A stretch of 63,805 bases of DNA from Antechinus flavipes. Lineage: Eukaryota. Location: positions 11,160,196-11,224,000 of the forward strand of contig NC_067401.1 of the NCBI RefSeq assembly GCF_016432865.1, written 5' to 3'. A program made the translations under genes and the position numbers. The notes beneath the pieces are model-generated. The model was not told where the DNA came from and made no database searches. It saw only the letters and a program-made list of their open reading frames with translations. Position 1 is the stretch's first letter, and every line of letters starts with the position of its first letter. Below are positions 31,326 to 42,484 of the stretch, piece after piece.

Positions 31326-42484
<11,159 letters not shown>

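What the first reader, a model, noticed from the sequence alone, without database searches (positions are those of the whole stretch)
32673..32702. Chordin's first BMP1/Tolloid cleavage site has lost its P1' Asp and gained an RGD
Seen: exon 4 encodes [10 protein letters not shown] (AAC at 32688-32690, CGC GGG GAC at 32691-32699). Known (recalled): human and mouse read HRSYS-DRGEP, BMP1/Tolloid proteases cut YS|D here, and they strongly prefer Asp at P1'. The second site (PMQA|DGP, exon 21) is intact. Inference: this chordin may resist N-terminal cleavage or shift it three residues to G|D, changing BMP release and shuttling. The paired D>N and E>D changes also create an RGD integrin-binding tripeptide in an exposed linker; chordin has been reported to bind integrins at the cell surface.
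Basis: partly seen in the sequence, partly recalled or inferred. Interest (0 to 1): 0.75.

Follow-up and report, generated by a model that had tools for sequence, protein, structure and literature searches.

The report
Marsupial chordin lacks cleavage-site aspartate
In marsupials the BMP inhibitor chordin carries asparagine instead of the near-universal aspartate at its first tolloid cutting site; the change is real, ancient and conserved, its effect is untested, and two rodent lineages made similar changes.

Summary
Exon 4 of chordin (window 32611-32739, + strand) reads [10 protein letters not shown], with AAC at 32688-32690.

It is not an assembly slip. Contigs from four independent sequencing runs of related organisms carry the same letters. 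It is also not species-specific: the opossum Gracilinanus agilis has the identical 34-residue core, so the change predates living marsupials. Between the two, that core shows no amino-acid changes against four silent ones, which indicates strong purifying selection.

Aspartate is the ancestral state. It is present in frog, teleost, sturgeon and 113 of 116 placental cluster representatives. The change is a G>A transition at a CpG.

Dipodomys kangaroo rats gained the same Asn independently, and the naked mole-rat has His, so the residue is not indispensable in mammals.

The "gained RGD" is better described as a relocation. 93 of 116 placental representatives carry an RGD 11 residues downstream, where marsupials read RED.

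The functional consequence is inference only. Published work calls the P1' Asp critical for BMP1, and the same Asp-to-Asn change in collagen I impairs cleavage. I therefore expect slower or shifted cutting in the linker rather than loss. Moderately interesting and cheap to test.

The parts
31326..42481 (+). Chordin (CHRD) coding region: about 22 coding exons found, from start codon to last coding exon.
   Evidence: Colinear tblastn matches of rodent chordin P0116 across residues 1-957. Exon translations have no stops.
32611..32739 (+). Exon 4. It encodes the linker between the first von Willebrand C domain and the first CHRD domain: (E)[42 protein letters not shown].
   Evidence: Splice signals and frame. 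Aligned to placental, frog and fish chordins.
32682..32687 (+). Tyr-Ser, the P2 and P1 residues of the first BMP1/tolloid site. They are unchanged, and Tyr is invariant in all sequences aligned.
32688..32690 (+). AAC = Asn at the P1' position, where placentals, frog, teleost and sturgeon have Asp.
   Evidence: Lynx reads AGC GAC and marsupials read AGC AAC, a G>A change at a CpG. The same letters are present in four run assemblies and in Gracilinanus.
32691..32699 (+). CGC GGG GAC = Arg-Gly-Asp. This is the only RGD found in the window's chordin exons. Placentals mostly read Arg-Gly-Glu here.
32721..32729 (+). CGA GAG GAT = Arg-Glu-Asp, at the place where 93 of 116 placental representatives have Arg-Gly-Asp.
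41900..41920 (+). Second BMP1/tolloid site PMQA|DGP, intact, with Asp at 41912-41914.
   Evidence: The site is named in PMC10001940.

Best explanation
This is a real substitution, fixed in marsupials, at the P1' residue of chordin's N-terminal BMP1/tolloid-like cleavage site. A G>A transition at a CpG turned Asp into Asn on the marsupial stem, together with Glu>Asp three residues downstream.

Shown: the surrounding 34-residue linker core has been held unchanged since opossums and dasyurids split, so it is still a working segment and not a decaying site.

Inferred: the linker is most likely still cut by BMP1/TLL enzymes. However, the canonical Ser|Asn bond should be a poorer substrate, because the enzyme's S1' arginine no longer meets a carboxylate. 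Cleavage would then be slower, or would move to a nearby Asp: Gly|Asp at +3, or the Asp of EDGHT or TDFVA further on. The expected result is a quantitative retuning of chordin inactivation rather than loss. It would be buffered by the intact C-terminal site and by twisted gastrulation.

The RGD is probably incidental. It replaces an RGD that most placentals carry 11 residues downstream in the same linker.
For: Real and old:
- The letters are identical in contigs of four runs and in Gracilinanus agilis protein P0130 and its DNA L001.

Derived state:
- Asp is present in Ascaphus, Lates and Acipenser and in 113 of 116 placental full-length representatives.

Mutational route:
- Lynx reads AGC GAC and marsupials read AGC AAC.

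Constraint:
- The exon 4 core of 34 codons has dN 0 and dS 0.19 (0 replacement and 4 silent differences).
- The pooled domain exons have dN 0.03 and dS 0.30.
- At the silent rate, about 15 replacement changes would be expected in the core.

Why cleavage should be affected:
- The BMP-1 preference for P1' Asp acts through Arg182 (PMC3186203).
- Asp is called critical, and mouse LDLR with Val at this position is not cut (PMC10953048).
- COL1A1 p.Asp1219Asn disrupts C-propeptide cleavage and causes disease (PMC13269806).

Why a shift is plausible:
- BMP-1 uses extra Asp sites 7 or 10 residues downstream in mini-procollagens (bioRxiv 10.1101/2022.11.10.516045).

Why it is tolerated:
- Dipodomys independently has Asn and Heterocephalus has His.
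- Partly cleaved chordin fragments still inhibit BMP.
- Cleavage sites vary between species; mouse has a third, Tsg-dependent site (PMC8377005, PMC5080453, PMC4988381).
Against: - No cleavage experiment exists for any chordin with Asn at P1', so the kinetic effect could be nil or total.
- Gly|Asp-Pro would put Pro at P2'. That lowered cleavage of model peptides by other astacins (PMC3186203), so the three-residue shift is not an obviously good site.
- Purifying selection on the whole core does not show that Asn or RGD themselves matter.
- Only two marsupial orders were sampled.
- No monotreme or sauropsid sequence was obtained.
- The marsupial BMP1/TLL active sites were not examined.
Confidence: 0.55

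Rival explanations
1. Effectively neutral change. In the chordin context, BMP1/tolloid enzymes accept Asn (and His) at P1' well enough that position and rate of cleavage are practically unchanged. The substitution is simply a tolerated CpG transition.
For: - The change arose independently in Dipodomys (two species), and a different non-Asp residue sits here in Heterocephalus.
- It is the most mutable kind of change.
- MEROPS TLL1 sites include at least one non-Asp P1' (GEAA|TSPM in PMC8262646 Table 6).
- Asn is isosteric with Asp.
Against: - The same Asp>Asn change in procollagen I impairs processing enough to cause disease.
- The P1' Asp is described as critical.
- Asp is kept in more than 97% of placental representatives and in fish and frog, which argues the residue is normally under selection.
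Confidence: 0.2
2. True loss of the N-terminal site. Marsupial chordin is not cut downstream of the first von Willebrand C domain, so BMP release depends on the C-terminal site, a cryptic Tsg-dependent site or other proteases.
For: - Loss of P1' Asp abolishes cleavage in LDLR and disrupts it in collagen I.
- The candidate replacement bond Gly|Asp-Pro has an unfavourable P2' Pro.
Against: - The linker core is as strongly conserved in marsupials as the folded domains, which is unexpected for an abandoned site.
- Singly cleaved chordin keeps its inhibitory power, and C-terminal cleavage even raises it (PMC8377005). Loss would therefore be a large change in a system that patterns all vertebrate embryos.
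Confidence: 0.15
3. The new RGD is a functional integrin-binding motif that changes how marsupial chordin is held at, or taken up from, the cell surface.
For: - The tripeptide is conserved between opossum and dasyurids.
- It lies in a protease-accessible linker.
- Chordin is cited as binding integrins (Larrain 2003, cited in PMC8377005).
- Both therian lineages mostly keep one RGD somewhere in this linker.
Against: - 20 of 116 placental representatives have no RGD at all, and frog, teleost and sturgeon have none in the linker. The motif is therefore dispensable and mobile.
- The whole core is conserved, not the tripeptide specifically.
- The reported partner is integrin alpha3, which by general knowledge is a laminin-type, not an RGD-type, integrin. 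The paper could not be read here.
- The structure model was too poor to judge exposure.
Confidence: 0.08
4. Assembly or sequencing error in this window.
For: None found.
Against: - The letters are the same in contigs of four separate runs, at word depths of 12 to 70.
- They are also the same in an unrelated assembly of a different marsupial order.
Confidence: 0.01

Closest known systems
Placental chordin N-terminal BMP1/tolloid site RSYS|DRGE (MEROPS entry, listed in PMC8262646 Table 6)
   Same: Orthologous position, fixed by identical flanks [13 protein letters not shown]-x-RG-x-PGAE. It lies in the same linker after the first von Willebrand C domain, with the same P4-P1 residues RSYS and P2' Arg.
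   Different: P1' is Asn, not Asp, and P4' is Asp, not Glu. The downstream RGD of most placentals reads RED.
Chordin of Dipodomys kangaroo rats (SN-RGEP) and of the naked mole-rat (SH-RGES)
   Same: Natural loss of the P1' Asp at the same site in otherwise normal mammals. In Dipodomys it is the very same Asp>Asn change.
   Different: These are young, lineage-restricted changes; sister Thomomys keeps Asp. They lack the accompanying Glu>Asp, so no Asp is available at +3.
COL1A1 p.Asp1219Asn, the C-propeptide cleavage-site mutation of high bone mass osteogenesis imperfecta
   Same: The same Asp>Asn change at the P1' residue of a BMP1 site. It is reported to disrupt cleavage (PMC13269806).
   Different: It is a pathogenic human allele in a trimeric collagen substrate that needs an enhancer protein. 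It is not a fixed state in a flexible linker of chordin.
LDL receptor BMP1 site: human Gly|Asp versus mouse Val
   Same: A natural between-species difference at P1' of a BMP1 site in an interdomain linker. It decides whether the protein is cut (PMC10953048).
   Different: The replacement is Val, not Asn. Restoring Asp alone was not enough in mouse, because P2 also mattered.

Membership tests
Chordin (CHRD orthologue) | Colinear similarity over the whole protein, with four von Willebrand C repeats and four CHRD domains. | tested here: met
   tblastn of rodent chordin covers residues 1-957 in order on the + strand. The nearest database proteins are chordins carrying PF00093 and PF07452. Pfam was not run on the window's own exons.
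Canonical BMP1/tolloid-like proteinase cleavage site | Aspartate at P1'. | tested here: not met
   The codon at 32688-32690 is AAC = Asn.
Canonical BMP1/tolloid-like proteinase cleavage site | Position in an interdomain linker orthologous to a mapped site, with the non-prime residues kept. | tested here: met
   Ungapped alignment to RSYS|DRGE. Tyr at P2 is invariant from fish to mammals. The literature places chordin sites in flexible interdomain regions (PMC9194680).
Canonical BMP1/tolloid-like proteinase cleavage site | Actual cleavage by BMP1, TLL1 or TLL2. | not testable with these tools
   This needs recombinant protein digestion with N-terminal sequencing or mass spectrometry.
RGD integrin-recognition motif | Arg-Gly-Asp tripeptide present and conserved in the lineage. 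| tested here: met
   Present at 32691-32699 and identical in Gracilinanus and four run assemblies. However, its position differs from the placental RGD, and the motif is absent in 20 of 116 placental representatives and in frog and fish.
RGD integrin-recognition motif | Exposed on a flexible loop. | tested here: inconclusive
   In the AlphaFold2 model of the opossum N-terminal fragment, the linker has pLDDT 30-36 and no secondary structure. The folded first domain was equally poor (mean pLDDT 47), so the model says little.
RGD integrin-recognition motif | RGD-dependent integrin binding. | not testable with these tools
   This needs binding or adhesion assays. The one paper on chordin and integrin alpha3 is not held.

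The most novel reading that the evidence does not exclude
Across marsupials the N-terminal tolloid site of chordin is refractory or displaced, so chordin inactivation and BMP release run on different steps than in placentals, frogs and fish. If the cut has moved to Gly|Asp, it falls inside the RGD. Proteolysis would then destroy the only RGD of the protein, coupling BMP release to loss of a cell-surface tether.
Probability: 0.15. Interest if true: 0.7.

Novelty: new variant of a known kind. Interest (0 to 1): 0.45.

Why it matters
Cleavage of chordin by tolloid-type proteases is the step that frees BMPs and shapes the dorsal-ventral gradient. The two cleavage sites are described as highly conserved, and the P1' aspartate as critical.

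A whole mammalian infraclass, plus two rodent lineages, living without that aspartate is a ready-made natural experiment. It shows how strict the rule is in a real substrate and how much slack the chordin-tolloid-Tsg system has.

The test needs only one recombinant protein and one digest. If cleavage proves unchanged, the finding still corrects the view that the aspartate is obligatory at this site.

Tried and rejected
1. I tried to build a marsupial-weighted full-length query by aligning window exon translations to a placental chordin (A1). MAFFT scattered the fragments and the alignment was unusable, so it was not searched.
2. The word search with a placental chordin listed only the best 120 of 351 hits, all placental. 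After three word searches and the one exhaustive search, no monotreme, bird, reptile or further marsupial orders could be fetched.
3. The AlphaFold2 model of the opossum N-terminal fragment was too low in confidence to judge linker exposure.
4. DNA for the Dipodomys protein is not on record, so its Asn codon was not seen.
5. Several papers are not held: Larrain 2003 on integrin alpha3, Larrain 2001, Piccolo 1997, Hopkins 2007, Lindahl 2011, Peluso 2011, Troilo 2015 and Pappano 2003. The mapped chordin site therefore rests on the MEROPS string quoted in PMC8262646 and on my recollection of Scott et al. 1999.
6. N-glycosylation of the new Asn was rejected, because Asn-Arg-Gly is not a sequon.
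7. Fast deamidation back to Asp was considered unlikely, because Asn-Arg is not a hot spot (general knowledge).
8. Three human chordin isoforms returned (P0041, P0042, P0049) were left out of all counts. One short fragment that looks primate or human (P0002) was not followed to its contig.

Full report
**What is there**

The window carries a chordin gene on the + strand. A rodent chordin (P0116) aligns by tblastn in colinear blocks from the start codon at 31326 to the last coding block ending at 42481. All the exon translations I extracted are free of stops.

The fourth coding exon runs from 32611 to 32739, with AG at 32609-32610 and GT at 32740-32741. It encodes (E)[42 protein letters not shown].
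- 32673-32702 translates to [10 protein letters not shown].
- AAC is at 32688-32690.
- CGC GGG GAC is at 32691-32699.

The second tolloid site, PMQA|DGP, is intact at 41900-41920. My results fit that, since the best database match is an opossum, but I did not verify the species.

**Is it real?**

I laid the contigs of four public runs (coded organisms A, B, C and E) on 32300-33100.
- One contig each of X1 (5643 bases) and X3 (3011 bases) spans the whole stretch.
- X4 reaches 32819 and X9 reaches 32767.
- Word depths are 12 to 70.
- Inside exon 4 the only differences are 32637 T>C (X9, Ser>Pro), 32666 T>C (X3, X4, X9; silent) and 32736 A>G (X9, Thr>Ala).
- Nothing differs at 32688-32699.

These are assembled contigs, not raw reads, and X1 differs from the window at a single base in 801, so it may be the source sample. 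The other three are independent.

**How widely is it shared?**

An exhaustive HMMER search with the 42-residue exon peptide found only placental-type sequences, all with SD-RGEP. A word search with the stop-free stretch around the exon then found "chordin-like, partial [Gracilinanus agilis]" (P0130), a didelphid opossum. It reads ...[40 protein letters not shown], identical to the window over the core.

Its DNA (L001, NCBI assembly GCA_016433145.1) has the same AGC AAC CGC GGG GAC.

By established phylogeny, didelphids and dasyurids sit on opposite sides of the deepest or near-deepest split of living marsupials. By parsimony, Asn and the RGD were therefore already present in the last common ancestor of living marsupials. 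Only two orders were sampled, so later reversals elsewhere cannot be excluded.

**Which state is ancestral?**

Partial chordins of a frog, a teleost and a sturgeon were recovered:
- Ascaphus truei (P0144)
- Lates japonicus (P0145)
- Acipenser sinensis (P0146)

They align as ...(HK)(S/T)YN-D-RSYLSS..., with Asp in the P1' column, Tyr at P2 and Arg at P2'.

Among 116 full-length placental cluster representatives (human isoforms left out), 113 have Asp. Asp is therefore ancestral and Asn is derived on the marsupial stem.

Lynx DNA (L002) reads AGC GAC where marsupials read AGC AAC. The change is thus a G>A transition in a CpG, the most mutable context.

**Recurrence in placentals**

Three of the 116 representatives lack Asp.
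- Dipodomys merriami reads SN-RGEP. Its 90% cluster shows that D. spectabilis has the same, while the pocket gopher Thomomys bottae has SD. That makes an independent origin inside kangaroo rats.
- Heterocephalus glaber (two isoform representatives) reads SH-RGES, and its genomic DNA (L003) confirms CAC.

Non-Asp residues at this position are therefore rare but recurrent, and compatible with normal mammalian development.

**Constraint in marsupials**

I compared the window with Gracilinanus by Nei-Gojobori counting.

| Region | Codons | Replacement differences | Silent differences | dN | dS |
|---|---|---|---|---|---|
| Exon 4 core (SASAFEY...GHT) | 34 | 0 | 4 | 0 | 0.19 |
| Exons 2, 3, 5, 6 pooled | 139 | 9 | 27 | 0.03 | 0.30 |

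The core has 78 replacement sites, so about 15 replacement changes would be expected at the silent rate. The seven codons just upstream in the same exon have two replacement changes. The surrounding sequence, introns included, is only about 76% identical.

The linker core is thus as tightly held as the folded domains. An abandoned cleavage site would not be expected to look like this. This shows selection on the segment as a whole, not on Asn or the RGD in particular.

**The RGD**

In fact, among the 116 placental representatives:
- 93 carry an RGD 11 residues downstream in the same linker (R-x-R-G-D-G-H-T).
- 5 carry D-R-G-D at the very position of the window: Saccopteryx (two representatives), Ochotona, and Phodopus (two isoforms). 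The two Saccopteryx representatives also have the downstream RGD and are counted in the 93.
- 20 carry none.

Marsupials read R-E-D at the downstream place (32721-32729), and their single RGD is the upstream one. Frog, teleost and sturgeon have none in the linker. The motif therefore moves about and can be lost, which argues against an essential role.

That chordin binds integrins is cited in a review (PMC8377005, citing Larrain 2003). That paper is not held. From general knowledge, its integrin alpha3 is not an RGD-type receptor.

An AlphaFold2 model of the opossum fragment gave pLDDT 30-36 and no secondary structure in the linker. The first domain was equally poor (mean pLDDT 47), so the model is uninformative.

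**What the change should do**

The following rests on literature plus inference.
- RSYS|DRGE is among the MEROPS TLL1 sites quoted in PMC8262646.
- BMP-1 prefers Asp at P1' through Arg182 of its S1' pocket (PMC3186203).
- Asp is present at the P1' of most known sites (PMC2064503).
- PMC10953048 calls the Asp critical. Human LDLR with Asp is cut, mouse LDLR with Val is not, and Asp>Val blocks cleavage.
- Most to the point, COL1A1 p.Asp1219Asn is the same chemical change at a BMP1 site. It disrupts C-propeptide cleavage and causes high bone mass osteogenesis imperfecta (PMC13269806).

The Ser|Asn bond should therefore be a poorer substrate.

BMP-1 can also use additional Asp sites 7 or 10 residues downstream of canonical ones (bioRxiv 10.1101/2022.11.10.516045). 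A shift to Gly|Asp (+3), or to the Asp of EDGHT or TDFVA, is thus possible. However, Gly|Asp-Pro would place Pro at P2', which lowered cleavage of model peptides by other astacins.

Three points speak against outright loss:
- The strong conservation of the core.
- Singly cut chordin keeps, or even increases, its inhibitory power (PMC8377005, PMC5080453).
- The cleavage-site repertoire is already known to differ between species. Mouse has a third, Tsg-dependent site (PMC4988381).

**My reading, with odds**

| Reading | Odds |
|---|---|
| Linker still processed, but with altered rate or position | about 0.55 |
| Practically no change | about 0.2 |
| True loss of the site | about 0.15 |
| Functional RGD | under 0.1 |
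| Artefact | about 0.01 |

**Comparison with what is known, and novelty**

The gene is an ordinary chordin orthologue. The site is orthologous to the mapped placental site but fails the defining P1' Asp test, so it is a variant of a known site and not a new kind of feature.

I found no paper on marsupial chordin cleavage in the held library, so the observation appears unreported there. It is moderately interesting because:
- it is clade-wide and conserved;
- it touches a rule that specialists regard as near-absolute;
- it can be settled by one digest.

There is no evidence yet of any functional effect, and placental parallels suggest tolerance.

**Limits**
- No monotreme, sauropsid or further marsupial orders were obtained.
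- Only contigs were available, not raw reads.
- No RNA evidence was obtained for exon 4 inclusion.
- Marsupial tolloid enzymes were not examined.
- Exon numbering is approximate. I found about 22 coding blocks, and an assembly gap at 38406-38555 lies in the long intron before the block at 40880.
- Human isoforms returned by the search were excluded, and no human contig was fetched.

Noticed in passing
P0115, P0188, P0192 (Dipodomys) versus P0190 (Thomomys); P0127 and L003:1048-1137 (Heterocephalus): Two placental rodent lineages have independently lost the P1' Asp of the same chordin site. Kangaroo rats have Asn, and the naked mole-rat has His (CAC in genomic DNA).
   Followed up: partly
window 37321-37650: The exon encoding the linker between the fourth CHRD domain and the second von Willebrand C domain is proline- and alanine-rich. 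It is about 20 residues longer than in the rodent query.
   Followed up: no
window 32740-32830: Intron 4 begins with G-rich GGGAGG-type repeats. Short 31-letter contigs pile up here with depths up to about 350 in runs X4 and X9, so this is probably a repeated motif in these genomes. X9 also lacks 41 bases at 32772-32812 and 17 bases near 32917.
   Followed up: no
window 38406-38555 (run of N) within 37849-40840: An assembly gap lies in the long intron between the vWC2 exon and the vWC3 exon. A few residues of the placental protein (around EKQD...LPG) found no match, so a very short exon could lie in or near the gap. The gap was not filled or looked up.
   Followed up: no
alignment A3; In placentals the P2' residue of the site is surprisingly free (Arg, Ser, Pro, His, Gly). 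The P2 Tyr is invariant from fish to mammals, and FEY upstream is also invariant. Recognition may therefore lean on the non-prime side and on the FEY motif.
   Followed up: no
P0146 (Acipenser sinensis): The sturgeon record is flagged UNVERIFIED_CONTAM by its source and contains a duplicated block of the first von Willebrand C domain, so it is a weak witness. The frog and teleost sequences agree with it at the site.
   Followed up: no
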